This document shows, in pieces, positions 7,332 through 46,148 of a stretch of DNA of 64,000 nucleotides. This stretch comes from Anolis carolinensis. Lineage: Eukaryota. The notes beneath the pieces are model-generated. The model did no database searches. It had not been told where the DNA came from and saw only the letters and a list, made by a program, of their open reading frames with translations. A program made the translations under genes and the position numbers. The stretch covers positions 148,940,107 through 149,004,106 of the forward strand of contig NC_085844.1 of NCBI RefSeq assembly GCF_035594765.1, written 5' to 3'. How positions within the stretch are numbered: the first letter of the stretch is position 1; each line of letters starts with the position of its first letter.

Positions 7332-7485
7332 ATATTATTTCCTAAAGGTTGTGAATATACAATATTTCTGATTGGTTTTTTTTTGTTTGTTGGAGGCAAG
7401 TATGAATGCTGCAATTAGGAAAAATGATTCGGATGTAATGGCCTTGCAGCTTTAAAGCCTGGCTGTTTCCTCCCTGAGTGAATTT

Positions 7486-7835
7486 TTTGTTGGGAGGTGT
7501 TAGCTGGCCCTGATTGTTTCCTGTCTGGAATTCCCTTGTTTTCAGAGTGGTGTTGTTTGCGATATTTTATGTGCTTCTACTGTCTGTGGCCCTGAGAAAA
7601 CAGAGGATTTTCCAGACTTTGATGATGGGAATACTTTGTTGGGAGGTGTTAGCTGGCCCTGATTGTTTCCTGTCTGGAATTCCCTTGTTTTCAGAGTGGT
7701 GTTGTTTGCGATATTTTATGTGCTTCTACTGTCTGTGGCCCTGAGAAAACAGGATTTGCCAGACTTTGATGATGGGAATACTTTGTTGGGAGGTGATAGC
7801 TGGCCCCGATTGTTTCCTGTGTGGAATTCCCCTGT
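7486..7835. repeat. ~148-bp tandem repeat (about 2.4 units) inside Helitron 1
   Basis: TTTGTTGGGAGGTGTTAGCTGGCCCTGATTGTTTCCTG recurs at ~7487, ~7636 and ~7782; homologous triplet in Helitron 2 (12800-13280). Confidence 0.9.
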
Positions 7836-8052
7836 TTATTTACTGTCCTGGTTTTAGAGATTATATTGTTCTGCATTATTCTATCCCAGTAATTATTTCA
7901 TATTAAAGAAGAATCTCACTTATCCAACATTCGCTTATACAATGTTCTGGATTATCCAACGCAGTCTGCCTTTTCATAATCAATGTTTTTGTAGTCAGTG
8001 TTTTAAATTCATTGTGATATTTTAGTGGTAAATTTGTAAATACAGTACAGTA

Positions 8053-8370
8053 CAGTAGAGTCTCACTTATCCAACATAAACGGGTCGGCAGAACGTTGGA
8101 TAAGCGCATATGTTGGATAATGAGGAATTAAGGATAACCCTATTAAACATCAAATTAAGTTATGATTTTACAAATTAAGCACCAAAACATCATGTTAGAC
8201 AACAAATTTGTCAGAAAAGTAGTTCAGTACACAGTAATGCTATATAGTAATTACTGTATTTATGAATTTAGCACCAAATATCACGATATATTGAAAGCAT
8301 TGACTACAAAAATGCGTTGGATAATCCAGAACGTTGGATAAACGAGTGTTGGATAAGTGAGACTCTACTG
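8053..8370 (+). mobile_element. Tc1/mariner MITE nested in an opposite-orientation copy of the same family (~7905-8568)
   Basis: TIR CAGTAGAGTCTCACTTATCCAAC / GTTGGATAAGTGAGACTCTACTG flanked by TA. Confidence 0.88.
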
Positions 8371-8583
8371 TAAATACTACATAGCATTACTGCGCATGGA
8401 ACTACTTCTTCTGTCAAATTTGTTGTATAATATGATGTTTTGGTGCTTAATTTGTATAACGATTACCTAATTTGATGTTTAATTGGCTTTTCCTAAATCC
8501 CTTCTTATTATCCAACATATCCACTTATCCTGCCGGCCTGTTTACGTTGGATAAGTGAGACTCTACTGTATATTGATAATCTT

Positions 8584-11129
8584 CTGAGGGAGATAATGGC
8601 GAAATATTATAAAAATCTATATAAGGAAGAGAGGGTAATGCAAGGGAACTTAAATATCAGAGAAAAAATTGCAGAGGAAGACAGAGAGTTATTAAACCAA
8701 CCAATAACGCAAGAGGAAACAATAAGGACAATTAAAGGGTTAAAGGGAGGCAAGTCACCAGGGCCAGATGGATTTCCAGCAGAATATTATAAAGCATTTA
8801 TGGAAGAGTTGGCACCACACCTAACAGAATTGTTCAATGAAATATACACTAAGCAAAAAGTCCCCCTAACATGGAAAGTATCAGAAATTATAACTATACC
8901 CAAAAAGGGGAGAGATTTAACACAACCAGGGTCATACAGACCCATTAGTCTATGCAATCAAGATTATAAAATATTTACAAAAATTTTAGCAAAAAGTTTG
9001 GAAACAATAATGCCAAAAATAATCAAAGAGGATCAATATGGATTTGTGAAGGGAAGAAAAATTGGGGATCCAATAAAAAATGTAGTAATTGCAATGAATC
9101 ATGCAAATTCGAATAAGAAAAAAATGGGAATTCTCAAATTGGATGTTTACAAAGCATTTGATAAAGTCAATCACAATTATCTGTTAGGATTATGTCAACA
9201 GTTGAATATGGGGGAAAACTTTTGCAAAACACTGCAACAATTGTACAGCAACTGTAAAGCAAAAATAAGGGTGAATAATGGAAGGACAGGAGAGATACCA
9301 ATTTTAAATGGTACAAAACAAGGTTGTCCATTATCCCCCACTTTATTTGTAATAGCGATAGAAATGCTAGCTGAAAGTATCAGGAATAGCACCAATTGGA
9401 CAGGGTACAAAATAGAAAAGGAAGGAGGACAAAAGGAAGAAATAAGGCTTAATTTCTTTGCCGATGATGCAATGATTATTACAAGTCAACCGTTAATTAT
9501 GGTAAAAGATATTATTAAAAAACTGGAAGAATTTAAAAATATATCAGGACTATTCGTTAATATTAAAAAGTCAGAGATACTATGTCTTAATACCCCACCA
9601 AGGGAACAACTGGAGATTAGGAAAATATCAGGGTTAAGATTAGGATTAAAGAAGCTGAAATACTTAGGAGTATGGATATATAAAAACCCAAAGAGTATAG
9701 TCAAGGGGAATTATAAACAAAAATGGAAGGTAATAGAGAAACAGTTTAAGAATTGGGAAGGAAAAACATTAACAAGAGTGGACAATAAGGGACAAATGGT
9801 TAAATGCAAAAGAGGAAGAGGGAGGCTGGGGGATTCCAAGTTTAGAAGTCTATCACGATGCGTTTCAAATCCAAAGATTATTGGAAATACAGTATACTAA
9901 AAAAAAATGGGCAAATATGGAGAAGATAATAAATAATACTAAAGAAAAAGAAATAATATTTAGGGAATGGAGTAGGAGAGAAGAAGCAGAATTTAAGGAA
10001 CCTTTTAAAGGAACAATAAAAGTGTGGAAAAAAAGAAAGAAGAAGCTAAGTCCAGGCAATGAGAATAAGATGGCAACTATATGGCAAATTAATTACAATA
10101 ACAACGAAATTATAGGCAGAACATTGAGATCAATTGAAAGTAGAGGGAAAAGGTTAGTGGAGGATTTGTACACAATAGATGGAGACCCTGTAGAACAAAA
10201 AGAAATTCAGAATTGGATAGGATCAGGGAATTGGATTCAAAGCTGGGCTATAAGACAGGAAATTTTTAGATTGAGAGAAAAAATTAGAGAACAGGACAGT
10301 CCATTTGAGAAGGTGATTAGGAAATGTTTGAGAGAGGAAAAGAAGGTGGCAGGAGATCTGTATGAACAAATTATAACGGTAAAAGAAGAAATAGAGGAAA
10401 TTTTCCAAACATGGAGAATGGACATGGAAATTGAGAGGGAAGATATACAAAGGGAAATAAGTAATATAGCAAAAGAAAAGTACAATGTATTAAGGGAAGC
10501 AAGAAGGAAAATGTTACAAAAATGGTACAGAACTCCTGCACAACTTTCACGGTTTTTACCAGGGATGAAAGATAGGTGTTGGCACGGTTGTGAACAAAGA
10601 GGGGTGTTCAATCATATGATATGGGAGTGCGATCGGGTGCAAGAATACTGGAGAATGATTGAAGGAGAAATCAATAGAATGCTAAATCTACAAATAGTAA
10701 TAGTTAATAGAAATGTACTACATGCAAGGATAACAGAAGTGAAGAATATACAAAAAGAAAAAATGATTGACAAATTAATAGCATGTGCACAAATTGTTTT
10801 AGTGAGCGGTTGGAAAGATAAAACAAAATGGACTCTGACGAATTGGTATAAGTATATAATTGATATGTTAAATGTAGAAATCACAAATTGCAAATGGAAT
10901 AATATAGATAAAATTGAAAATGTTGCAATAATCAAGGGGATGTGGGAACCAGTTAAGAACTATTTAGAGAATGTACTAAGATGTGGAGTGGAAAAATTAA
11001 GATTGAGATTGATATTTCAAATGTAACTTCTGTAGTTTGTTGTATAAAGTGTATGTACAAGGAGGGGAGGGTGGGAGGGTGGGAGTGGGATAAGATGACA
11101 AAACAACAATAAAAAAATTAAAAAAAAAA
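8584..11129 (+). mobile_element. 5'-truncated L1-clade LINE (ORF2 RT plus CCHC domain) inserted in Helitron 1
   Basis: KSPGPDGFPAEYYK, YRPISLCNQDYKI, GTKQGCPLSP, FFADD, KYLG, CWHGC..H....C motifs. G-rich 3'UTR, AATAAA, poly(A); 9-bp TSD GATAATCTT (8575-8583 / 11130-11138). Confidence 0.95.
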
Positions 11130-12618
11130 GATAATCTTAAATTATCTGCTTAGAACTGGATTATATGAGGCCCCTTCTTCACAGCTGTATAAAATGCACA
11201 CTGAAGTGGATTATATGGCAGTGTGGAGTCAAGATAATCCAGTGCAAAGCAGATAATATAAGATTATAAATGGGTTATATAGCTGTGTTGAAGGGCCTTG
11301 AGTCTACACTGCCATATAATCCAGTGCAAATTAGATAATCTGTGCAAGAAGTCTAAGTGAGGCCTAAATCTGCCTGTCCCCTAACTGAAACCTGGCTGTC
11401 CCTTGGTTGCTAGGCAACCAAGTGGGCAGAGATTAGCCTTCTAAACTGGCAGCAATTGGATAAAAAAAATTATTGCTCTCCCTCTAATTAGGACTTTATT
11501 TTTCTTTTCTTTTTGTTGTATCAACCTTGAGGCATGGATGATGGGTTGTGTTGTCAAATTTTGAGGTTGGGGGGCCTGTACTTTTGTTGTTTTGTGAATT
11601 GCCGTGATGCCATCACTCTTTTATATATATAGATGATGACAGTTAAAGTGGAATTATAGTGCTATCATAGTGTAATGTAAACAACCTGCCCATTATTGGA
11701 GCAGATGGATTTTTGGCCTCCTTTAGAGTTGAAATCTTTGTCATATTTTTGTGGATCTCTTATGCAATTATATCACTATTCTTCCTGAATTTCTTGGATT
11801 TTAATAAGCAGTCTTGTGATATTTTAAAAACTGTTTATGTTTATGCTGTAAATATCTGTTTATCTTCAAGGTGTTACATTATTTTTTCTCTTCATTGTTT
11901 TCACTACAGTAGTGTAATAGTCTCTCTTTTGGAAATTAGATTTTAATGATTTCCTCCTAGTGTTGTGAAATACAATATGTTAACACTGTTGTGCCCCCTT
12001 ACTGATAAGCAACTACTGAGAGTTAAAGAGGTCCATTTTCTTGTCAATTTTCTGTCTGAATTTTTTTATCTCTTCTCATGAGTGATCTCTAGTGTGGTGT
12101 GCAGGAAAAAAGACCCCTGTTGCAAATCCATACATCACTCATGGGAGAAGAGTTAGGAATGTTAAGCAATTGCTTCCCAAGCAGCAGAAGAATGGACCTC
12201 AAGTGATCCCAGAATCTGCTTACTAGTAAGTAGGGCTTAGAGGACCTCCATAGCTCCTACACAACCCCTAACCCTGGGTTTGCATGGGGATTGTAAATAC
12301 ATAGGATTTGCAAATGCATAGCTGTAGGATACATGCCCACAATTGCCTAACAGGATTCCAGTCAATATTTATTAAACCCTCCTATGAAACAGAGAAACAT
12401 CTGATTTTTTAAAATTATGAAGCACTAGCTGTGCCCGGCCACGCGTTGCTGTGGCTTTTTTTTAGTGGTGTTGGTCAATCTACATTAGGTTTTATTTTTG
12501 TTGTGACTGTCAACAAACATTATACAGTATTATTTTTTCATTTATTATTTTAAAGAAATATGATAGGATATTACACTATAATATATAATAGTATACGACT
12601 ATTTCACAATATTAGTAG

Positions 12619-12659
<41 letters not shown>

Positions 12660-13723
12660 TATTGTATTGTTATTAGTATTATATTGTAGTATATATATAA
12701 TTATATATATAATTATAATATTATTAGCAGTATTATATGTATATACAATGTATTATATTATTATATATATTAATATATTGCAAATTGGCCCCAGAGTATG
12801 GAATGGCCTTGCAGTTTCAAAGCCTGGGTAGTTCCGTGTGTTGGGGGGGGGGGGTGGGAATGCTTTGTTGGGAGGTGCTAGGTGGACCTGATTGTTTCCT
12901 GGATGGAATTCCAGTGTTTTCAGAGTGTTGCTTTTTATTTACTGTCCTGAGATGAGAAAGTGATGAGTACGGAATGGCCTTGTACCTTCAAAGCCTGGCT
13001 GCTTCTGTGCCTGGGGGGGGGGGGGAATCATTTGGTGGGAGGTGTTAGCTGGGTGTGGTTTCCTGGATGGAATTTGTGTGTTTTCAGAGTGTTGTTGTTT
13101 ATTTACTGTGCTGAGATGAGAGAGTGATGAGTACGGAATAGCCTTGTAGGTTCAAAGCGTGGGTGGTTTCCTGTGTGAAGGGGGGAATCGTTTGGTGGGA
13201 GGTGTTAGATGGCCCTGATTGTTTCCTGGATGGAATAGCTGTGTTTTTAGAGTGTTGATCTTTATTTACTGTCCTGAGATGATATTGTTGTGTATTATTG
13301 TACCAGAGTAATTATTTCATATTACAGTAGAATCTCACTTATCCAACATTCGTTTATGCAGTGTTCTGGATTATGCAATGGAGTCTGCCTTTTAATAGTC
13401 AATGTTTTTGGAGTGAGTGTTTTCAATTTATTGTGATATTTTGGTGGTAAATTTGTAAATACAGTAATTACTACATAGCATTACTGCGCATGGAACTACT
13501 TTTTGTGTCAAATTTGTTGTATAACATGATGTTTTGCTGTTTAATTTGTATAATGATTACCTAATTCGATGTGTAATTGGTTTTCCTGAATGCCTTCTTA
13601 TTATCCAACATATTTACTTATGCAACGTTCTGCCGGCTTGTTTATATTGGATAAGTGAGATTCTAGTGTATATTTATAATGTTATATTATTTGTTTAGAA
13701 GTGGATTATATGAGGTGCCTTCT

Positions 13724-13724
13724 G

Positions 13725-13777
<53 letters not shown>

Positions 13778-14212
13778 GTCTTGAATGATTATCATTGTTA
13801 TAAAAATAATAACGTACTATTATTAGTTGTTATTATATTGTTGAATGATTATTATCAATGTTATAATAATTATTAATTTGTGAATAATTCTCACTATAAT
13901 AATAATAATAATTTTCTATTATTACGAATTGTTAATACATTGTTGAATGATTGTCAGTGTTATAATAATTATTATTATGACAGCCTTGAATGTTTATTAT
14001 AGTTAATATAATAATTAGTTATTATTATTAGTTATTATTACATTGTTGAATGATTATCAGTGTTATAATAATAAGAACTGACTATTATTATGAATTATTA
14101 TGTTTTCGAATGATTATCAGTATTATAATAATAATAATAAATTAGTATTATTATTGGTTATTATTACATTCTTAACTGATAATCAGTTATTATTATATTA
14201 ATAATAATTATT
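13724..14212. repeat. (TTA)n plus AT-rich minisatellite inside Helitron 2
   Basis: About 7 copies of TTGAATGATTATCAGTGTTATAATAATA-like units. Confidence 0.85.
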
Positions 14213-14345
14213 ACTCACAGGGAAGGGAAAGGTGAGGGTGATAGGGTTTGAGAGGGAAAAAAGGGGGCTTCAGAGGCATTGGAGGGGTTGTAATTTGTGG
14301 GTGAGAACAACAACAACAATAACAACAACAAAAAAGGGGGGAGCT

Positions 14346-14530
14346 CAGCCTGGGCCAACTTGGGCCTTCCCTTGACTTGTTTTGGGCACCAACTTCCACC
14401 CTTCCTGGCCCGAGGCTCTTTCCTTTTCCCCGTCAGCCATTTAACCGGGTGAGGGGGAAAAGGAAGGGGCCTGAGGCCGGGAAGGGCAGGAGTTGGCGCC
14501 CCAAACAACTCAAGGGGAGGTCCAGGCCTG
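14346..14530. mobile_element. Palindromic hAT-like MITE inside Helitron 2
   Basis: ~70-bp imperfect arms (GGGCCTTCCCTTGA...TTCCTTTTCCCC / GGGGAAAAGGAA...TCAAGGGGAGGTCC); ends CAGCCTGGGCC / CAGGCCTG. Confidence 0.65.
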
Positions 14531-14563
14531 CTCAAGGGCCGTGCCCTCCTCTTCCCCCCTCAC

Positions 14564-14692
14564 CTTGAAGAGCTTGAAGACCTCCAAGAAGAACCGAGAA
14601 GGGAGGAGGAGAGAGGGTGAGGCGGGGGCCTTCCTTGCGCTGAGGGGAGGGGGGAGGGAGCCTGAATTGCGACTGGGGGCCCTCCATGGACC
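14564..14692 (-). pseudogene. Putative Helitron-captured exon (129 nt) of unknown origin
   Basis: Long pyrimidine tract + CAG|GGT acceptor and AAG|GTGAGG donor. Phase-0 translation GPWRAPSRNSGSLPPPLSARKAPASPSLLLPSRFFLEVFKLFK has no stop. Confidence 0.55.
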
Positions 14693-15294
14693 CTGAGGGG
14701 GGAGGAGATTGAGGGGGAGAGGGCAGAGAGCGACTTGAGGCCTGCACACCTCCCAGCACGGCCTCCTGCATCCCGCACCCACCAAGGAATCTGCCTTCCT
14801 ACCTTCCTTCCTTCAGCCCAGGCCCAGCTCTGAGGCGAGGTGTGTGTGTGCGCGTGGGAAGGGATGAGAGGGGAGTGTGCACGCAGGTGCACATCGCCTG
14901 TTGCGGTTTTTGGCCGTTTGTGACCCTGTGATTGTGTTTGTTATGTAAATGTGTTGTATCTTACTGGAGCCATGGATGATGGGTTGTCTTGTCAAATTTC
15001 GAGGTTGGGGGGCCTGTAGATTTGTTGTTTTGTGCGTCGCCGTGATGCCATCACTCATTTATATATATAGATTGTGAAAATAGGCCAAGATTATCCTGGT
15101 CTCTGAACTGTCACACCCAGCTTCTGGAATGATTCCATCAGCTTTGCCTCCGAAATATCCTGCATGTCTCTTGGGAAGACAGGTGGACAAATGTTAGTGT
15201 TCTGGAAGAAACAAAGACCACCAGCATGGAAGTGATGATCCTCTGCGCAGGCCTGTAGCCAGGATTTTGATTCGGGGGGGGGGGGGGGGCTGAC

Positions 15295-15445
15295 CAATGC
15301 CATAACATTGCCATATGGCATATGGCATAACATAGAACAGAGACAGAGAAAAGACGCAGGCACGGGCTGGCCTCGAACTCATGACCTCTTGGTCAGAGTG
15401 ATTTGTTGCAGCTGGCTGCTATCCAGCCTGCGCCACAGCCCGGCC
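15295..15445 (-). mobile_element. Internally deleted copy of the SINE at 43581
   Basis: Head GGCCGGGCTGTGGCGCAGGCTGG...GAGTTCGAGGCCAG joined directly to the tail segment TGTCTCTGTTCTATGTTAT..GGCATTG. Confidence 0.75.
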
Positions 15446-15860
15446 TATGACAAACATTTAATGTCATTATACAGTTAACAAGGACAGACAATTCATAGAC
15501 ATTGCCTAGACAGAGGTAAAGGTTTTTCCCGTCTTTTCCATTTCCGGCAGCTGGAGGCTATGCTCAACTCCAGCCGGGGGGGGGGGGGGGGGGGTTGTCG
15601 CACCATCTTCCATGCCAAGGAGCTTTGTCATCCTTAGATGTCTTCCAGATCAAATTGCTTTATGGGCACCTTTTATAATCTCCCCACTTTTTTTTAAGTA
15701 CCTTTTTATCTACTCATATTTCTTCTTTTGATCTGCCAGGTGGCCAGGGAGTTGGGTCTGATGGTGGTTGCTCTCTCTGACTCAGGCTTGAACTGCCAAC
15801 CTTGCAATGGGCAGGATTTTTTTTTACAGCTAAGGAGTTTAGCCCACTGAGCTAATTCCC
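15446..15860 (-). mobile_element. Older tRNA-derived SINE (Sauria-related)
   Basis: Minus strand TTAGCTCAGTGGGCTAAA (box A), GGCAGTTCAAGCC (box B), GTAGATAAAAAGGTAC core. Confidence 0.55.
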
Positions 15861-18659
15861 CAAGATAATATTTGTATGGTCCCTTTGCCTTAGAGAATTC
15901 CTTGATATACAATTCAACATCCTTATTTTTAGTTTGCTATAATATGATTATGTTTACTTTGATTTGGAATTTGTCATCTCCTTTTGGCGAACTGATCTAA
16001 CGTAACCATCTATCTATTTCCATTTTTGATAAAAGCATTTGCCAGAATCCCACAGCTCTGTTACAAATGCATAACCTACATTTACGCATCCATAAAAGCT
16101 AAGTATTTACGATACTTACATAGCTCCCAGTTTAGGGCTACATAGGATCTGTGAAAACCTCCAAAATTTCATTTACTGGGAAGCAACTGCTGGGATTGAT
16201 CTGGGCTCATTCTTTTGTTGATTGAAGAGTAGCTGCCTGAAGTTGCAGCTTCTCCCACCATGCAAGCATTTTCTGCTTCAAAGAGGATTAGTGTTGGGGT
16301 CTTTTTTCTGCCTGTTGCACTAGAAATTGCTCACAGGAGGGATGGGAACATTAGGGAGCTATCGATCTCATTGACTGCTTCCTAGTAAGTAAGATCAGGG
16401 GAGGGGGGGGAGTTGGCTAGAATCACACAGATCACACAGGATTCTGCCAGTTGAAAGTACAATGGACCCTTGGTATCTACTGGGGTTCTATTCAAGGACC
16501 TCACGTGGATACTAAATTCTTGGATGCTCATATCTTGTTATATACAATGGTGTAAGAAATCATGTGTGTTTTTAAAATATAAATGGGAAAAAAATCATGG
16601 ATTAAAAAAAATTGCAGGGAGGAGAGGAATATTTTTAAGCCATGGGTAGTTGAATCAATGGATGTAGACTCTTTGGATAAGGAGGGCTAACTTTTCCTTA
16701 AGCAACATTTTAAACCTGTAAGTAAAAACTATGAGTTTAACTCCCACATTTAGAACATTATATGTATTATGGACTATATCTTGAATATATTTAGCATTCA
16801 TACAAATGACTCCAAGAAAAGTGTCTTTGAACTTAACTGCATTCATTTAGTCTAGCCTACCTGCCTATATTCACCTGGATAGAAAATGAAATTTTTGCTA
16901 CGCGGGATGCTCTGCTTAAAATGACAGTCTCATCTCCATCTTGTCTATACTCAAATAGCTTCCAAATAATATGTTTTTTTTCAGATGAGTGATTAGAGAG
17001 ATTGTGTAATGCTTGTGTATTCAGGAATATGATGCCTCATTCAAAGCATCATCGTCACAATACATTTTCAATGAACATGCAGAAAATGAAATATTTCTTA
17101 TTTACTTCATTCTTTTTTAATATGCACATTTTTGAAGTTGTGATAGGCACCTAAAAGTACTATATTTTGCCTCTTTTACATTGTTGTCACTACCTTGATC
17201 AGACATTGGCTTTTTATACATTTGTTTTATATAACAAATGAAGTTGCTAGGTCATCCTCGCATTTGTCACAAAACTTTTACCCTCCCAAATGCACCTTCA
17301 TGCATGCTAAGTAATACCGTTCATCTCTAGTAGGGGCTCTATTATTAGAAGTCAGGAAATGGGACAAGGGTTGGGAACCCTATCTAAGCAGGAACATTTT
17401 AATAACCTTACCAAACACTGGAATGCTTCAACTACAAAAACAAACACTAAGGCCCTGCCCTGGATTTCAGTCCGCTTCACAGTGGTGGAATGCACATAGA
17501 AAATCAAATTCATAAAATAGATCTGGGATGTATAAAGGAAATGGGAATAGAAACGCTGTTTCTATTCATAACCATCATACTTGATCCAGTCCCATTCCCT
17601 CCACCTAACCTGATTTGGCAAGTTCAGTCCCTATTCTATTTTAAACCTTCCAAAAATCCTGAACTTGGAAAATCTGATTCTGATAAAGCAAAATAAAACA
17701 GCATTTGGCTTTTTGTTGTTGCTAAAGCATCATACTGCTGGTTCATGGTATATGTATGGTCTACAATCATTCCAAGGTCCCTTTCACATCTAGATTATGG
17801 AGCTATGTATTGCTGATCCTATACCTGTGAACTTGAGCTTTGTGGCCTAAATAAATAATTTTACATTTGTCTCCAATGAATTTCATTTTCTTAATTTTTG
17901 TCCGATTTTCTAGTTTATCTAACTATTTTTTGCAATCTGTACTTTTCTTTCAATGTGTTAGCCACCCTTCCACATTCCAGTGGATGTAATATTTGTCTTT
18001 GCTTGTTCAGTAGCAATGATTTCCTTTCAGTTTGCACAGCTAAAAAATGTGGAAAGAATCAATAAAATAGTGAGAGGTAGCATCAATGGGTTAGATTCCC
18101 TTCCTGGCTCATTAAAAAGGACAGAACATTGTTTGATAGTGGACTGGTTTCTTCCTGGGCGGAAAAACTCAAAAGGTGATGCTGAGTTAACCCTGTTTGA
18201 TTCCTTGGCCAACAGCTTGCAGGGTTCCTTGGGCTTTGGTTTTGTCTCCTAAGCTATTTAACATATAAATTAAATCACTAGGAAATGCCATTTTGAGTTT
18301 TGGATTTCAGTGCCCTTAAAATAGAGCTACATAACTTCAGACAAACTCTTATAGTGTTTTCATCCATGTGTCAATTAATAATAGTGGCTGCTTTCAGAGT
18401 GGTTGCACTTTAGAGACCTGTGTTTTGTAAAAGAAGATGATCATTACTTCAAATTACTTGTCACAATTCAGTCTCAGCCTGCTGTTCTGTTATGGAACAT
18501 AGGGCAAGACACCCTTTTCATAGCTATGTATGCTATCCGATTTAGGTTGGTTATAGTTGACCATTACTCTATGATGGACTTCCCAAGATTGTGTGTATGG
18601 CTGCTTCCATTGGGATGCCATCCCAGCCTTGGTGCAGGGCTCCACTATTTTGTGAGCCG

Positions 18660-20794: not shown

Positions 20795-21987
20795 AGTTGG
20801 GTCGATACAGGGAACGCCGTGGATGTAGCGTACCTAGATTGGAGTAAGGCTTTTGACAAAGTCCCTCACAACCTTCTGGCAAACAAACTAGTAAAATGTG
20901 GGGTAGACAAAACTACGGTTAGGTGGATCTGTAATTGGGTAAGCAAACGAACCCAAAGGGTGCTCACTAATGCGTCGTCTTCATCTTGGAAAGAAGTCAC
21001 AAGTGGAGTGCCGCAGGGTTCTGTCCTGGGCCCGGTTCTGTTTAACATCTTTATTAACGACTTAGACGATGGGTTAGAAGGCACGATCATCAAGTTTGCA
21101 GATGACACCAAACTGGGAGGGATAGCCAACACTCCAGAAGACAGGAGCAGAATTCAAAACGATCTTAACAGATTAGAGAGATGGGCCGAAACTAACAAAA
21201 TGAAGTTCAACAGGGACAAATGCAAGATACTTCACTTCGGCAGAAAAAATGGAATACAAAGATACAGAATGGGGGACGCCTGGCAAGACAGCAGTACATG
21301 TGAAAAAGATCTTGGAGTCCTTGTGGGCAACAAGTTAAACATGAGCCAGCAATGTGATGCGGCTGCTAAGAAAGCCAATGGGATTTTGGCCTGCATCAAT
21401 AGGGATATAGCGTCTAGATCCAGGGAAGTCATGCTCCCCCTCTATTCTGCCTTGGTCAGGCCACACCTGGAATACTGTGTCCAATTTTGGGCACCGCAGT
21501 TGAAGGGAGATGTTGACAAGCTGGAAAGCGTCCAGAGGAGGGCAACTAAAATGATCAAAGGTCTGGAGAACAAGCCCTATGAGGAGCGGCTTACAGAACT
21601 GGGCATGTTTAGCCTGCAGAAGAGAAGGCTAAGAGGAGACATGACAGCCATGTACAAATATGTGAGGGGAAGTCATAGGGAGGAGGGAGCAAGCTTGTTT
21701 TCTGCTGCCCCGCAGACTAGGACGCGGAACAATGGCTTCAAACTACAGGAAAGGAGATTCCACCTGAACAACAGGAAGAACTTCCTCACTGTGAGGGCTG
21801 TTCGGCAGTGGAACTCTTTGCCCCGGACTGTGATGGAGGCTCCTTCCTTGGAGGCTTTTAAGCAGAGGCTGAATTGCCAACTGTCGGGAGTGCTTTGAAT
21901 GCGATTTCCTGCTTCTTGGCAGGGGGTTGGACTAGATGGCCCATGAGTTCTCTTCCAACTCTATTCTATGATCCTATGATTCTATGA
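20795..21987 (+). mobile_element. 5'-truncated young CR1 LINE with an uninterrupted RT ORF (20819-21898)
   Basis: YLDWSKAFDKVPH, SGVPQGSVLGPVLFNIFINDLD, KFADDTKL, LYSALVRPHLEYCVQFW motifs; CR1 3'UTR hairpin and (ATTCTATG)n tail. Confidence 0.96.
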
Positions 21988-28764: not shown

Positions 28765-28961
28765 TTTGAGAGCTGTTCGACAGTGGAACTCTCTCCCCGG
28801 GGCCATGGTGGAGGCTCCTTCTTTGGAGGCTTTTAAGCAGAGGCTGGATGGCCATCTGTCGGGGGTGCTTTGAATGCGATTTCCTGCTTCTTAGCAGGGG
28901 GTTGGACTGGATGGCCCATGTGGTCTCTTCCAACTCTACTATTCTATGATTCTATGATTCT
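28765..28961 (+). mobile_element. CR1 3' end fragment
   Basis: Near-identical to 21790-21987, including the (ATTCTATG)n tail. Confidence 0.92.
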
Positions 28962-30400: not shown

Positions 30401-30748
30401 NNNNNNNNNNNNNNNNNNNNNNNNNNNNNNNNNNNNNNNNNNNNNNNNNNNNNNNNNNNNNNNNNNNNNNNNNNNNNNNNNNNNNNNNNNNNNNNNNNNN
30501 NNNNNNNNNNNNNNNNNNNNNNNNNNNNNNNNNNNNNNNNNNNNNNNNNNNNNNNNNNNNNNNNNNNNNNNNNNNNNNNNNNNNNNNNTAGGCAATCACA
30601 GAGCGCTGCAGCCAGCNNNNNNNNNNNNNNNNNNNNNNNNNNNNNNNNNNNNNNNNNNNNNNNNNNNNNNNNNNNNNNNNNNNNNNNNNNNNNNNNNNNN
30701 NNNNNNNNNNNNNNNNNNNNNNNNNNNNNNNNNNNNNNNNNNNNNNNN
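30401..30748. other. Assembly gaps (30401-30588 and 30617-30748) around a 28-bp island
   Basis: Runs of N. Confidence 1.
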
Positions 30749-37276: not shown

Positions 37277-38943
37277 TGTTACAAGTCCTACCCACGGCCG
37301 GCCCAACACGGAGGCCACGTGAGGCTGCCGCCTCGGGCGCAGGCCCGGGGGGGGGCGCCGTCAGGCGCCCTGGCCCCGCCTCCCACGCTGCGTGAGGGGC
37401 GGGGTCAGGGTGAGCTGCACGGGAGGCTCCCGCGCAGCTCAGCCTCGCCGGCCTGGCCTTTTCCAGGGGGCCAGACTGCAGCAAAGGTCCTTGCAGGCCG
37501 CGATCGCGGCCTGAAAGGACCTTTGCTGCAGTCTGGCCGCCTGGAAAAGGCCAGAGCGCGCTGGAAGGGAGGCAAGGCCCCGTCTGGGCGGAGCCTCGCC
37601 TCCCGGCCTGAGCGCCCTGGCCCCGCCTCTCACGCTGCGTGAGAGGCGGGGCCAGGATGAGTTGCGTGGGGGGCGGGGCCAGGGTTGGCCTCGCCTCCCG
37701 CGCAGCTCAGCTTGCCAGTCTGGCCTTTTCCAGGGGGCCAGACTGCAGCAAAGGTCCTTGCAGGCCGCAACCCTGGCCCTGCCTCCCACGCAGCTCACCC
37801 TGGCCCCGCCTCTCACGCTGCGTGAGAGGCGGGGCCAGGGCGCGGGAGGCGGGGCCCGCCGGCGGGGCGCAGGAGGCGGGGGGGCGCAATTTCCCCTCCC
37901 CGCTTTATATAAAAAAATATGTCCGGCCGGCCCTGGTCCTACCTTATGTCAGAGGTTTGACAGCACAGATTAAAATCTAGCAAGGCATTTTACTCAACAC
38001 TATTATGATATAGAGTGGTATTCCAAAAACCAGGCCAGCTTACACTTGTTATGGTTAACAGCTCTTTATGCAAGGAGCCAGGAAAAAAACCCAAAACTGA
38101 CCTACTAGACACTGTTGCATTAGAGCCCCGAAACACCCTTTCACCACAAACCACACTCTGTCCAGATATTTAAAAATTATATAAAGATAAGCAAATTCAA
38201 AAGAGAGAAAGTTCAAAAGATTATTTTCAAGATAGCTGAGAGTCCAAAATCTTTTCATATACAGTCTCCAGAGTCAATCCACAAAAATATCCATAAACAA
38301 GATAGCATGAATCGAAGGCAGGCAACCTATGCCACACATGAACTAGAAGCAAAAACAAACTTAGAAAGCTGAATGCATGAATTCCAAGAACATTGGACCA
38401 AAAACGGAGAGATGTTCACCTGAATACAACAGTACTCTCACAAACGATTGCACCAGCAGGAACCACTTTAAAAGGCCTCAATCCCTCCCATAACATCATT
38501 TCTCACACACCTGCTTTTCATTTCCTTATCTCTAAGCCTCTGGAAAAGTGGTCTGTCTTTGTTGCATGCTCTGTCTCCGCAATTCCAAGTGCCTTGACCT
38601 AGACAAGCATTCATCTCCCACATTTCTCTCAGCCTGCACTTCTGGCAGGTTCTCATGAGAACTGATATTGCTTTCTCCAGTCTCATGGGAACTGCCAGGA
38701 GCTTCCAAAACAACTCTCACTAGGCCACTTCTATCCTTCTTTGAGCCATCTAAATCTATCCCAGCATCCCTTCCTCATCTTCTGAACACTCAGAATCTGA
38801 CCAGGCTACAACAGACACAATCACCTTTTTGGTGGCATGTACCAGTTCAACACTTCTCTCCCCCCTCCCCTCCAATAGGATGGGGCAATGTGTAAGTCAG
38901 GCAATGCAGAGTGTGGGGTGACAGGTTCCCCTCACCTCCGACA
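37277..38943 (-). mobile_element. Possible solo LTR interrupted by the hAT element
   Basis: TGTTACA...GACA termini with A/C-rich, LTR-like skew on the plus strand; no TSD found. Confidence 0.4.
37293..37935. mobile_element. CpG-rich non-autonomous hAT transposon
   Basis: Perfect 8-bp TSD GTCCTACC (37285-37292 / 37936-37943); TIR CACGGCCGGCC / GGCCGGCCCTG. Confidence 0.93.
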
Positions 38944-43580: not shown

Positions 43581-44080
43581 GGCCGGGCTGTGGGCCGGAC
43601 GGTGGTGCAGGCTGGTTAGCAGCCTGCTGCAATAAATCACTCTGACCAAGAGGTCATGAGTTCGAGGCCAGTCCATGTCGGGGTGAGCTCCTGACAATTA
43701 AAAATAAAATATAGCCCCTGATCGTTGTTGACCTATGCAACCCGAAAGATAGTTGCATCTATCAAGTAGGAAATTTAGGTACCACTTATATGTGGGAGGC
43801 TAATTTACGACACCATAAAAATCATCCAGCCGCCGTTGGAATGAGGAAGTGCCGTCGCAGTAGATGATGAAGCAGCTGCTCCCCCTGTGGCCGGAATCAA
43901 GTATACCCTCAGGAAGCTGGAAGCTGGAGACAGTTTAAATTGCCTCTGCGTCTGTCTCTGTTCTATGTTATATGGCATTGAATGTTTGCCTTATATGTGT
44001 ACAATGTGATCTGCCCCAAGTCCCCTTCGGGGTGAGAAGGGCGGAATATAAATACTGTAAATAAATGAATAAATAATAAA
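43581..44080 (+). mobile_element. Full-length tRNA-derived SINE with an L2-type 3' tail
   Basis: Box A/B head (GAGTTCGAGGCC), Sauria-like core, tail GCCCC..GTCCCCTTCGGGGTGAGAAGGGCGG + (TAAA)n. Confidence 0.8.
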
Positions 44081-44454: not shown

Positions 44455-44634
44455 CTTCCCCACTAAGTCAGCAACTGAGGGCACAGGTTTTCCTTTCTGG
44501 TGTCTTATAGTCGGTGGACTCTGTCCATCCCAGTCTTGAAGTTCTTCTATGCTCTTCAGATAAAGCAAAGCCTTCAGCCCAGTGCAGTAGTCTTCGATCA
44601 CAGTAAAGTCTTGATTCTGTATTGCACTGCATAC
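44455..44634 (-). CDS. DPYD: Dihydropyrimidine dehydrogenase coding exon (equivalent to human exon 20)
   Basis: Translates [60 protein letters not shown]. Acceptor ATATAG|GTATGC, donor AAG|GTATGT, 180 nt, phase 0-0, in frame with the 61400-61542 exon. Confidence 0.97.
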
Positions 44635-45424
44635 CTATATAAGACATACAATCTCTATATATAAAAGGATAAAAACATTTCGGCCTAGGACAAAACAACA
44701 AAACTACACATCCCAGAAACAATAAACTTGGCAACACAACCCCTCATCCATGCCTCTACGTTCATACAACAAAAAGAAAAGAAAAATAAAGTCCTAATTA
44801 GAGGGAGAGGAATAATTGTTTTAGCCTCTTCCCCACTGCCTATAAAATACAGATTATCTTATTTGAACTGGATTATATGGCAGTGTAGACTCAAGGCACT
44901 TCCACACAGCTATATTACCCACTTATAATCTTATATTATCTGCTTTGAACGGGATTATCTTGAGTTCACACTGCCAAATAATTCACTTCAGTGTACATTT
45001 TATACAGCTGTGTAGAAGGCCCCTCATATAATCCAGTTCTAAGCAGATAATATAAGATTATAAATATACAGTAGAGTCTCACTTATCCAACATAAACAGG
45101 CCGGCAGAATGTTGGATAAGTTGGATTATAAGAAGGGATTCAGGAAAAGCCGATTAAACATCAAATTAGGTAATGATTATACAAATTAAGCACCAAACAT
45201 CATGTTATACAACAAATTTGACAGTAAAAGTAGTTCAATGCTCAGTAATGCTATGTTGTAATTACTGTATTTACAAATTTAGCACCAAAATATCACAATG
45301 AATTTAAAACATTGACTACAAAAACATTGACTACTAAAAGGCAGACTGCGTTGGATAATCCAGAACACTGTATAAGCGAATGTTGGATAAGTGAGATTCT
45401 ACTGTAATATGAAATAATTACTGT

Positions 45425-46148
45425 GGTAATCCAGTCCAACCCAATTCTGCCAGGGATTCACGCCCAACAGATGGCCACCCAGCCTCTCAATAATAATACA
45501 GTAGAGTCTCACTTATCCAACACTCACTTATCCAATGTTCTGGATTATCCAACGCATTTTTGTAGTCAATGTTTTCAATATATCATGATATTTTGGTGCT
45601 AAATTCGTAAATACAGACAGACAGTTAAAGACACCCCTAAAGGCCATCCAGTCCAACCCAACTCTGCCATTGGACGATACAATCCAAGCACTCCCAACAG
45701 ATGGGCAGCCAGCCTCTCAATAAGAATAAGAATAAAAATATCATACAATCCTAAGGTTAGCAGATACCCCTAAGGATCATCCAGTTCAACTTCCTTATAT
45801 CATGCAGGAGGACACAATCCAACCACTCCTGACAGATGGCCATCCAATATCTGCACAATAATAATACACATCGAATCATAGCACCAGACAGTTAGGAGAC
45901 ACCCCTAAAAGCCATCCAGTCCAACCCAATTCTGCCATGCAGGACACAATCCAAGCAGATGGCCACCCAGCCTCTCAATACTAGTACTAATAATAATAAT
46001 AACAACAACAACAACAACATACAGTCCTAAGATTTAGAGTGACCCCTAAGGATCATCCAGCTCAACTTCCTTCTACCATGCAAGAGGACACAATCCAAGC
46101 ACTCCTGACAGATGGCCATCCAGCCTCTACATAATAATGATGATGAAG

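What the first reader, a model, noticed from the sequence alone, without database searches (positions are those of the whole stretch)
14564..14692. Helitron-delivered exon, sense and in frame with DPYD intron 20
Helitron 2 holds a GC-rich block absent from copies 1 and 3. It has a textbook 3' splice site (CTCTCTGCCCTCTCCCCCTCAATCTCCTCCCCCCTCAG|), a strong donor (AAG|GTGAGG) and 129 nt (43 codons) between them. It is on the DPYD strand, intron 20 is phase 0, and the phase-0 frame is open (ending ...PSRFFLEVFKLFK). Inclusion would add 43 aa after ...LVGK with no frameshift. This looks like exon capture and shuffling by a vertebrate Helitron, well known in maize and bats; I cannot identify the donor gene. 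Caveat: all three frames are open because of the GC content.
Basis: partly seen in the sequence, partly recalled or inferred. Interest (0 to 1): 0.8.

Follow-up and report, generated by a model that had tools for sequence, protein, structure and literature searches.

The report
Pseudo-exon in repeated Helitron cargo
A 129-base stretch with very good splice-site look-alikes lies inside a transposon in a huge intron of a lizard DPYD gene, but it is part of a many-copy repeat with no recognisable protein relative and no sign of being spliced, so it is best read as an unused pseudo-exon.

Summary
On the minus (DPYD) strand a long C/T tract ends in CAG at 14693/14694. Then come 129 nt (14692 to 14564) and AAG|GTGAGG. 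Exon 20 (44455-44634) ends in phase 0, and all three frames are open. The GC-rich block 14214-14951 is missing from the two sibling repeat copies in the window.

Contigs of public DNA runs show that the block is a high-copy repeat in this species and a close relative. It is therefore a recurrent cargo of a transposon subfamily, not a private capture.

No protein relative was found. Pfam, two word searches, one exhaustive HMMER search of frame 0 and the ESM Atlas were all blank. No junction or loose end was listed at either splice site, but no run is on record as RNA, so use is untested.

An open frame is expected by chance about half the time at this composition.

Other notes of this scan, on other DNA of the same genome, describe Helitron cargo with a TESK1-like first-exon end. 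Here I could confirm only a 7-residue remnant, FFSEVFK once the family's majority letter is used, next to the donor.

Verdict: a strong but probably silent pseudo-exon, of low to moderate interest.

The parts
14564..14692 (-). Candidate pseudo-exon, 129 nt, open in all three frames. Frame 0 would add 43 residues after DPD residue 874.
   Evidence: It lies in repeated sequence: summed depth in X1 is 465,070 at 14586 and 924 at 14674, against 10-50 in the unique intron.
14693..14730 (-). Acceptor look-alike: a C/T-rich tract ending in CAG.
   Evidence: score 14.6 bits, third of 2796 AG sites. Diverged paralogous contigs cover it (records 1 and 2 of X1, 14642-14848 and 14669-14834).
14555..14563 (-). 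Donor look-alike GTGAGGGGG after AAG.
   Evidence: 11.9 bits, best of 2135 GT sites. It is predicted to be paired with the exon's own C/U-rich part in the RNA fold.
14361..14524 (.). Imperfect 164-nt palindrome (foldback) just downstream of the donor in the DPYD sense.
   Evidence: 79% self-complementary; arms 14332-14438 and 14447-14553; -80 kcal/mol, z -9. One search gave only sub-threshold generic miRNA-hairpin matches. This is the highest-copy part of the block (995,000 summed depth in X1).
14214..14951 (.). GC-rich cargo block (GC 0.59, CpG observed/expected 0.32). It is multi-copy in the genome.
13728..14213 (.). TTA microsatellite and AT-rich 60/99-nt minisatellite that precede the GC-rich block inside copy 2.
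12794..15077 (+). Helitron-like repeat copy 2, which carries the block. The 3' part from 14952 is shared with copies 1 and 3.
   Evidence: The 3' end is very high-copy (bins 14914-15113).
7480..11640 (+). Helitron-like repeat copy 1, without the block.
44651..45600 (-). Helitron-like repeat copy 3 (inverted, and extending further to the right), without the block. It ends about 17 nt from the exon 20 acceptor.
44455..44634 (-). DPYD exon 20 (DPD residues 815-874), followed by a phase-0 donor.

Best explanation
The 129-nt stretch is a pseudo-exon inside the cargo of a non-autonomous Helitron-like transposon. That cargo is a GC-rich, CpG-decayed, partly palindromic segment carried by many copies of a transposon subfamily in this lizard genome and in a close relative. 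The copy in DPYD intron 20 is one decayed member of that subfamily. It happens to lie antisense to the transposon and sense to DPYD. Its donor may be inherited from a captured first-exon/intron-1 boundary of a TESK-like kinase gene; this is inferred. Its acceptor is a by-product of the C/T-rich sequence just upstream. The open frames follow from base composition. It is most likely skipped, or included at trace level only, in DPYD mRNA. Shown here: the anatomy, the absence from the sibling copies, the multi-copy status and the lack of protein relatives. Inferred: non-use, and the origin of the donor.
For:: contigs of DNA run X1 (organism A) laid at 80% likeness or more give summed depths of 35,000-995,000 across 14214-14913. 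The exon bins give 570,300 and 114,700, against 10-50 in the unique intron 15914-17200. Run X7 (organism B) gives 1,900-265,000 against 12-74. At 14411, 14488, 14512, 14534, 14586 and 14735, dozens of distinct contigs (29-77 in X1) carry a letter different from the window's, so the window copy departs from a family majority. Several of these differences are CpG-to-CpA decay. Loose ends at 14952 and 14927 show where other family members diverge; the block replaces an internal part of copies 1 and 3, which fits an alternative internal region of a subfamily and not a nested insertion with a target duplication; no Pfam family in nine ORFs of the block, no word-search hit for frames 0 and 2, 0 hits at E<=0.001 among 1.84 billion representatives for the 100-aa frame-0 ORF, and no usable ESM Atlas hit, with low recognition; frame 0 stays open in 48% of shuffles; 43 pseudo-exon pairs in the same intron score at least as well as exon 20's real sites; the donor is predicted to be base-paired; no joint or loose end is listed at 14692 or 14564. 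The two runs guessed to be RNA (X8, X17) have almost nothing on 14614-14813.
Against: The two splice-site look-alikes are the strongest pair in 44 kb of intron by my matrix, so some inclusion is plausible. The RNA test is weak. No run is on record as RNA, X17 behaves like DNA (unique intron at depth 10-14), contigs drop rare forms, and only the best-supported rows of a long table are shown. Summed contig depth is not a copy number. No listed contig spans the whole 129 nt: record 24 stops at 14625 and records 1 and 2 start at 14642 and 14669. It is therefore not shown that the complete pseudo-exon exists elsewhere. Only frame 0 had the exhaustive protein search, and frame 1 had none.
Confidence: 0.7

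Rival explanations
1. It is a true exonization. The Helitron-borne stretch is used as an alternative cassette exon of DPYD in some tissue and adds 43 residues between DPD residues 874 and 875.
For: It has the best donor and the third-best acceptor of the intron, a length divisible by three and an open frame 0. TE exonization and deep-intronic cryptic exons are established. The human DPYD c.1129-5923C>G pseudo-exon is an example from my own knowledge, not checked here.
Against: No junction or loose end is listed at either site, and the runs guessed to be RNA hold almost nothing on 14614-14813. The donor is predicted to be paired. The C/U-rich body has no recognisable coding character. Frame 0 stays open by chance in about 48% of shuffles. 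The insert would fall in a conserved part of DPD. Pseudo-exons as good as real exons are common in this intron.
Confidence: 0.12
2. The cargo is a genuine host-gene capture. It would be the end of the first coding exon and the start of intron 1 of a TESK1/TESK2-like kinase, picked up once by a Helitron and then amplified, as with NUBPL in HelibatN3. The donor would then be the native exon-1 donor. This concerns the origin and is compatible with the best explanation on function.
For: Notes of this scan on other pieces of the same genome report Helitron cargo with a TESK1 first-exon fragment. Here frame 0 ends FFLEVFK..K|GT. The family-majority letter at 14586 (47 contigs in X1) changes TTG (Leu) to TCG (Ser), giving FFSEVFK. 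From my memory that is the glycine-loop end of TESK2; TESK1 has FFSEVYK. The family majority restores CpGs, as expected for a former CpG-island first exon. An ATG lies at 14685 in frame 2.
Against: The match is 7 residues and the reference motif is from memory. I could not obtain any TESK sequence with the tools. Residues upstream of FF show no kinase likeness in any frame. The exhaustive HMMER search of frame 0 found nothing, and PDB and paper searches for the motif were blank. Parts of the block (14414-14477) continue in many copies into an unrelated abundant repeat (loose end at 14477), so the block is at least partly a mosaic of other repeats.
Confidence: 0.4
3. The block holds no host-gene DNA. 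It is a mosaic of fragments of other repeats (SINE, Penelope-like, foldback) and simple sequence, as published for the composite anole family Helitron-2N3_AC. On this reading the kinase-like heptapeptide is chance.
For: Novick et al. 2011 (PMC3014272) report that Helitron-2N3 contains Poseidon and SINE fragments. The depth profile is very uneven along the block, from 924 to 995,000 in X1. Many contigs leave the block at 14477 into another abundant repeat. There is a 164-nt palindrome. No protein relatives were found.
Against: The independent notes on TESK-like cargo in other copies, and the improvement of the motif by the family-majority letter. I could not compare the block with Repbase or Dfam consensus sequences.
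Confidence: 0.35

Closest known systems
HelibatN3 with the NUBPL promoter and first exon (Pritham and Feschotte 2007, as cited in PMC2997563)
   Same: A non-autonomous Helitron subfamily carries a GC-rich, promoter/first-exon-like cargo with a splice donor, amplified to many copies and scattered in introns.
   Different: There the parental single-copy gene is identified. Here no parental locus could be shown; only a 7-residue kinase-like remnant was found. The host is a lizard, not a bat.
Composite anole Helitron-2N families, especially Helitron-2N3_AC (Novick et al. 2011, PMC3014272)
   Same: Abundant non-autonomous elements of about 2 kb in an anole genome share their ends, and one family carries extraneous DNA.
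   Different: The published cargo is Poseidon and SINE fragments, and no gene capture is reported. I could not align the window copies to those consensus sequences, and the species is coded in the run table.
Intronic pseudo-exons in long vertebrate introns, and TE exonization such as Alu (established knowledge, from memory)
   Same: Good acceptor and donor look-alikes at exon-like spacing that are normally not spliced, with TE sequence supplying the pyrimidine tracts and donors.
   Different: This one scores above the gene's own exon 20 sites and sits in a multi-copy Helitron cargo, so the same cassette is offered to many genes.
Human DPYD deep-intronic cryptic exon, c.1129-5923C>G in intron 10 (from memory, not checked here)
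   Same: It is a precedent that a pseudo-exon in a DPYD intron can be activated and can matter for enzyme activity.
   Different: It lies in a different intron and species, needs a point mutation to be activated, shifts the frame and is not TE cargo.

Membership tests
Helitron (non-autonomous) | Short hairpin close to the 3' end | tested here: inconclusive
   Copies 1 and 2 have GTGAT-GCC-ATCAC (5-6 bp) about 17 nt before the end of similarity. It is degenerate in copy 3. This is shorter than the classic 16-20 nt palindrome.
Helitron (non-autonomous) | 3' terminus CTRR and 5' terminus TC, inserted between A and T without a target duplication | tested here: inconclusive
   Similarity among the three copies ends at ...TATATAGA|T, or ...TATAGAGA|T in copy 3. 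That is an A/T-rich target but not a clean CTRR. The 5' boundary could not be fixed: the shared TATACAAT lies upstream of the tandem 149-164-nt units.
Helitron (non-autonomous) | No terminal inverted repeats, no Rep/helicase ORF, multi-copy | tested here: met
   No inverted repeat joins the two ends of copy 2. There is no long ORF or Pfam hit. The 3' end has summed depth 1.4-2.3 million in X1.
Helitron (non-autonomous) | Similarity to a described Helitron consensus (Repbase or Dfam) | not testable with these tools
No repeat library is on hand.
Helitron gene capture (captured host exon) | Cargo absent from sibling copies that share the ends | tested here: met
   13728-14951 has no counterpart in copies 1 and 3.
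Helitron gene capture (captured host exon) | Cargo homologous to a host gene (parental locus or protein) | tested here: inconclusive
   No hit in Pfam, two word searches, the exhaustive HMMER search of frame 0, the Atlas or PDB. The only sign is FFSEVFK plus the donor, compared with a TESK motif from memory (and notes). The genome itself could not be searched.
Helitron gene capture (captured host exon) | Both splice sites coincide with those of the parental exon | not testable with these tools
   No parental locus is available. If the source is a first exon, it had no acceptor.
Expressed cassette exon (exonized TE) | Consensus acceptor and donor, in-frame length, open frame | tested here: met
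   The open frame is uninformative.
Expressed cassette exon (exonized TE) | Spliced reads or transcripts across both junctions | tested here: inconclusive
   no holder is on record as RNA; no joint or loose end is listed at 14692 or 14564. X8 holds only an unspliced 127-nt contig (14705-14831) and one paralogous contig (14344-14625). X17 has depth 0 on 14614-14813. These are contigs only, so absence is not shown.

The most novel reading that the evidence does not exclude
A Helitron subfamily of this lizard carries a cassette derived from the CpG-island first exon and donor of a TESK-like kinase gene. It has spread the cassette to hundreds or more introns. There its strong donor, and the fortuitous acceptor in the C/T-rich part, are spliced at low level into many host mRNAs, DPYD among them. 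That would be a reptile counterpart of the bat NUBPL-Helitron story with real transcript consequences.
Probability: 0.1. Interest if true: 0.55.

Novelty: new member of a known kind. Interest (0 to 1): 0.25.

Why it matters
If the cassette were spliced, a transposon would be remodelling a conserved metabolic enzyme, DPD. It would also be offering the same exon to many genes at once, which is how Helitrons are thought to shuffle exons. As it stands, the result is mainly a caution. GC-rich, C/T-rich transposon cargo will look like an in-frame exon in whatever gene it lands in, because its frames are open by composition. The same cargo has been flagged several times in this genome by first readers. 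The useful residue is a lead: an abundant anole Helitron subfamily may carry a kinase first-exon fragment. I did not find this reported in the two anole Helitron papers I read (PMC3014272, PMC2997563).

Tried and rejected
- BLAST of the block against the rest of the window found no second copy, only its own palindrome.
- The search of earlier findings by sequence was blank.
- Rfam gave only generic, sub-threshold miRNA-hairpin matches on the palindrome. I do not read it as a miRNA gene.
- The bacterial promoter/terminator scan is irrelevant for a vertebrate and is ignored.
- A paper search for Helitron plus TESK1 and for the heptapeptide motifs found nothing.
- A PDB search with the exon-end peptide found nothing.
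- The ESM Atlas gave no usable hit.
- A nested TE insertion with a target duplication is rejected, because the block replaces sequence present in copies 1 and 3.
- A CpG island at the block is rejected for the present sequence (observed/expected 0.32), although the family majority is richer in CpG.
- I ran no further search on frame 1.
- I could not obtain a TESK reference by any tool, and I did not type one from memory into a tool.
- The joined model (exon 20 plus the candidate exon) was not searched.
- The N runs at 30401-30588 and 30617-30748 were left as they are.

Full report
**1. Observation**

The letters are as described. Read on the minus strand, a 38-nt C/T-rich tract ends in CAG, with the AG at 14694/14693. 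Next come 129 nt (14692 to 14564) and then AAG|GTGAGG, with the GT at 14563/14562. Frame 0 gives 43 codons ending ...PSRFFLEVFKLFK. The other two frames are open too.

DPYD exon 20 lies at 44455-44634 on the minus strand. Its 60 codons align to residues 815-874 of solved dihydropyrimidine dehydrogenase at E 3e-30. It ends ...ADLVGK followed by GT, so intron 20 is phase 0. No exon 21 motif is in the window, so 1-44454 is all intron 20.

**2. The repeat copies**

The window holds three copies of one repeat:
- Copy 1 at about 7480-11640.
- Copy 2 at about 12794-15077.
- Copy 3, inverted, from 44651 rightwards. It ends about 17 nt from the exon 20 acceptor.

In copy 2 the stretch 13728-14951 takes the place of an internal, itself palindromic, segment that copies 1 and 3 share. 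This stretch is a TTA microsatellite, an AT-rich minisatellite to 14213, and then a GC-rich block. So "absent from copies 1 and 3" is right, but it is a replacement and not a clean insertion with a target duplication.

The block has these properties:
- GC is 0.59 and CpG observed/expected is 0.32.
- It contains a 164-nt imperfect palindrome at 14361-14524, which folds at -80 kcal/mol with z -9.
- Rfam gives only sub-threshold generic hairpin matches there.

**3. Is it more than chance?**

- The donor is the best of 2135 GT sites and the acceptor the third best of 2796 AG sites on the minus strand of the intron part. As a pair it is the strongest.
- The real exon 20 scores only 5.0 and 8.8 bits.
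- 43 pseudo-exon pairs of 50-300 nt reach those values, and 5 of them are in frame and open.
- One of these is a second strong pair, 21613 to 21467.

The open frame says nothing. At this composition (43% C, 13% A) frame 0 stays open in 48% of shuffles and all three frames in 9%. Together with the one-in-three chance of a length divisible by three, "in frame and open" has a prior of about 0.16 once the two sites are given.

**4. The block is a repeat family**

The stretch was 2987 letters, 14214-17200, at 80% likeness or more. All runs are kept as contigs.

Summed contig depth:

| Region | X1 (DNA, organism A) | X7 (DNA, organism B) |
|---|---|---|
| Unique intron 15914-17200 | 10-50, from contigs with 0-1 differences | 12-74 |
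| Block 14214-14913 | 35,000-995,000 | 1,900-265,000 |
| Bin 14514-14613 | 570,300 | 16,006 |
| Bin 14614-14713 | 114,700 | 5,839 |

Organism B's orthologous intron is about 95-98% identical.

At 14411, 14488, 14512, 14534, 14586 and 14735, between 29 and 77 different X1 contigs carry a letter other than the window's. So there is a family majority from which the window copy departs, often by CpG to CpA decay.

Inside the pseudo-exon the depth is uneven: 465,070 at 14586 and 924 at 14674.
- Diverged contigs cover the acceptor side (X1 records 1 and 2, 14642-14848 and 14669-14834, depth about 206 each).
- A paralogous contig covers the donor side (X8 record 24, 14344-14625, 10 differences and 3 gaps).
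- No listed contig spans all 129 nt.

Loose ends show how family members differ:
- Most family members are preceded at 14952 by the T-rich sequence seen in copies 1 and 3.
- Others share a diverged form of 14897-14926.
- Many copies leave the block at 14477 into another abundant repeat.

Summed contig depth is not a copy number. Even so, the contrast with the unique flank and the many distinct variant contigs show that the block is multi-copy and partly a mosaic. This is what a cargo-bearing subfamily looks like, not a private capture.

**5. Protein relatives**

All protein tests were blank:
- Nine ORFs of the block, on both strands, have no Pfam family apart from one sub-threshold chance match outside the block.
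- The word search found nothing for the 100-aa frame-0 ORF or for the 88-aa frame-2 ORF that holds an ATG at 14685.
- The exhaustive HMMER search of the frame-0 ORF against 1.84 billion representatives gave 0 hits at E<=0.001.
- The ESM Atlas gave no usable hit, with low recognition.

Frame 1 was not searched. Frames 1 and 2 were not searched against long proteins.

**6. The lead from the scan's own notes**

Notes on other pieces of this genome (AI notes, not evidence) describe Helitron cargo with a decayed first coding exon and the start of intron 1 of TESK1. They also describe a "TESK-kinase-like end" read as in frame with other genes.

I tested what I could. Frame 0 ends FFLEVFK, followed by what looks like a 9-nt duplication (LFK) and the donor. 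The family-majority letter at 14586 turns Leu (TTG) into Ser (TCG), giving FFSEVFK. From my memory, FFSEVFK(VR) and FFSEVYK(VR) are the glycine-loop ends of TESK2 and TESK1.

That is 7 residues. Nothing upstream looks kinase-like in any frame. I could not obtain a TESK reference through any tool. I therefore give this origin 0.4.

If it is right, the donor is the native exon-1 donor. The acceptor then lies inside a former first exon, so it was never an acceptor.

**7. Use in DPYD**

- No run is on record as RNA.
- X17, guessed to be RNA, covers the unique intron at depth 10-14 and so behaves like DNA.
- X8 has no unique-intron coverage. On the block it holds only an unspliced 127-nt contig (14705-14831) and the paralogous contig.
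- Neither a joint nor a loose end is listed at 14692 or 14564. The table shows only the best-supported rows, and contigs drop rare forms.
- The minus-strand RNA fold pairs the donor with the exon's own C/U-rich part, and the stable foldback follows directly downstream. This is a prediction.

I infer that the stretch is not used or is used at trace level, but this is not shown.

**8. Comparison with what is known**

- The closest case is HelibatN3 with the NUBPL promoter and first exon, amplified more than 1000 times (cited in PMC2997563).
- Next are the anole Helitron-2N families of about 2 kb. One of them, 2N3, is a composite with Poseidon and SINE fragments (PMC3014272).
- Whether the repeat here is a Helitron by the classic criteria is only partly testable. 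The hairpin is short, the 3' end is ...TAGA before a T rather than a clean CTRR, and the 5' end could not be fixed.
- It has no terminal inverted repeats and no ORF, and it is very abundant.

**9. Verdict**

It is a strong but probably silent pseudo-exon in a multi-copy transposon cargo. The scan has met the same kind of cargo before on other DNA of this genome.

Noticed in passing
window 37300-37900: A true CpG island inside DPYD intron 20 (GC 0.75, CpG observed/expected 0.65). It is built of direct and inverted repeat units of about 70-80 nt (D11, D18, I12, I15). It could be an intronic promoter or a GC-rich transposon.
   Followed up: partly
window 21467-21613 (minus strand): A second in-frame, open pseudo-exon of 147 nt with a strong acceptor (14.3 bits) and donor (9.8 bits) on the DPYD strand. 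It lies next to a repeat that is also present at 28767-28938.
   Followed up: partly
window 14914-15113: In run X8 (guessed to be RNA) the shared 3' end of the Helitron-like repeat has summed depth 263,000-432,000, against 36,000 for the SINE at 15314-15413. In DNA run X1 the SINE is the deeper of the two. The 3' end of this repeat family may be strongly transcribed, or the library may be biased.
   Followed up: no
window 14411-14923: Most listed differences between the window copy and the family majority are A in the window where the family has G on the + strand (14488, 14512, 14534, 14586, 14881, 14923). Some are CpG decay. Other notes of the scan (s1-555036, s1-517356) speak of strand-biased mutation in Helitron cargo.
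   Followed up: no
window 15340-15445 and 43593-43684: Two inverted copies (88% complementary) of a very abundant tRNA-derived-looking SINE (I10; summed depth 3.4 million in X1).
   Followed up: no
window 8523-11131: Copy 1 of the repeat is interrupted by about 2.6 kb of strongly G- and A-skewed sequence (GC skew 0.34-0.45, AT skew 0.31). This may be another cargo or a nested element.
   Followed up: no
window 44635-44651: Repeat copy 3 ends only about 17 nt upstream of the exon 20 acceptor, so the native branch-point region of exon 20 lies in or at the edge of the transposon. It was also noted as s1-555037.
   Followed up: partly
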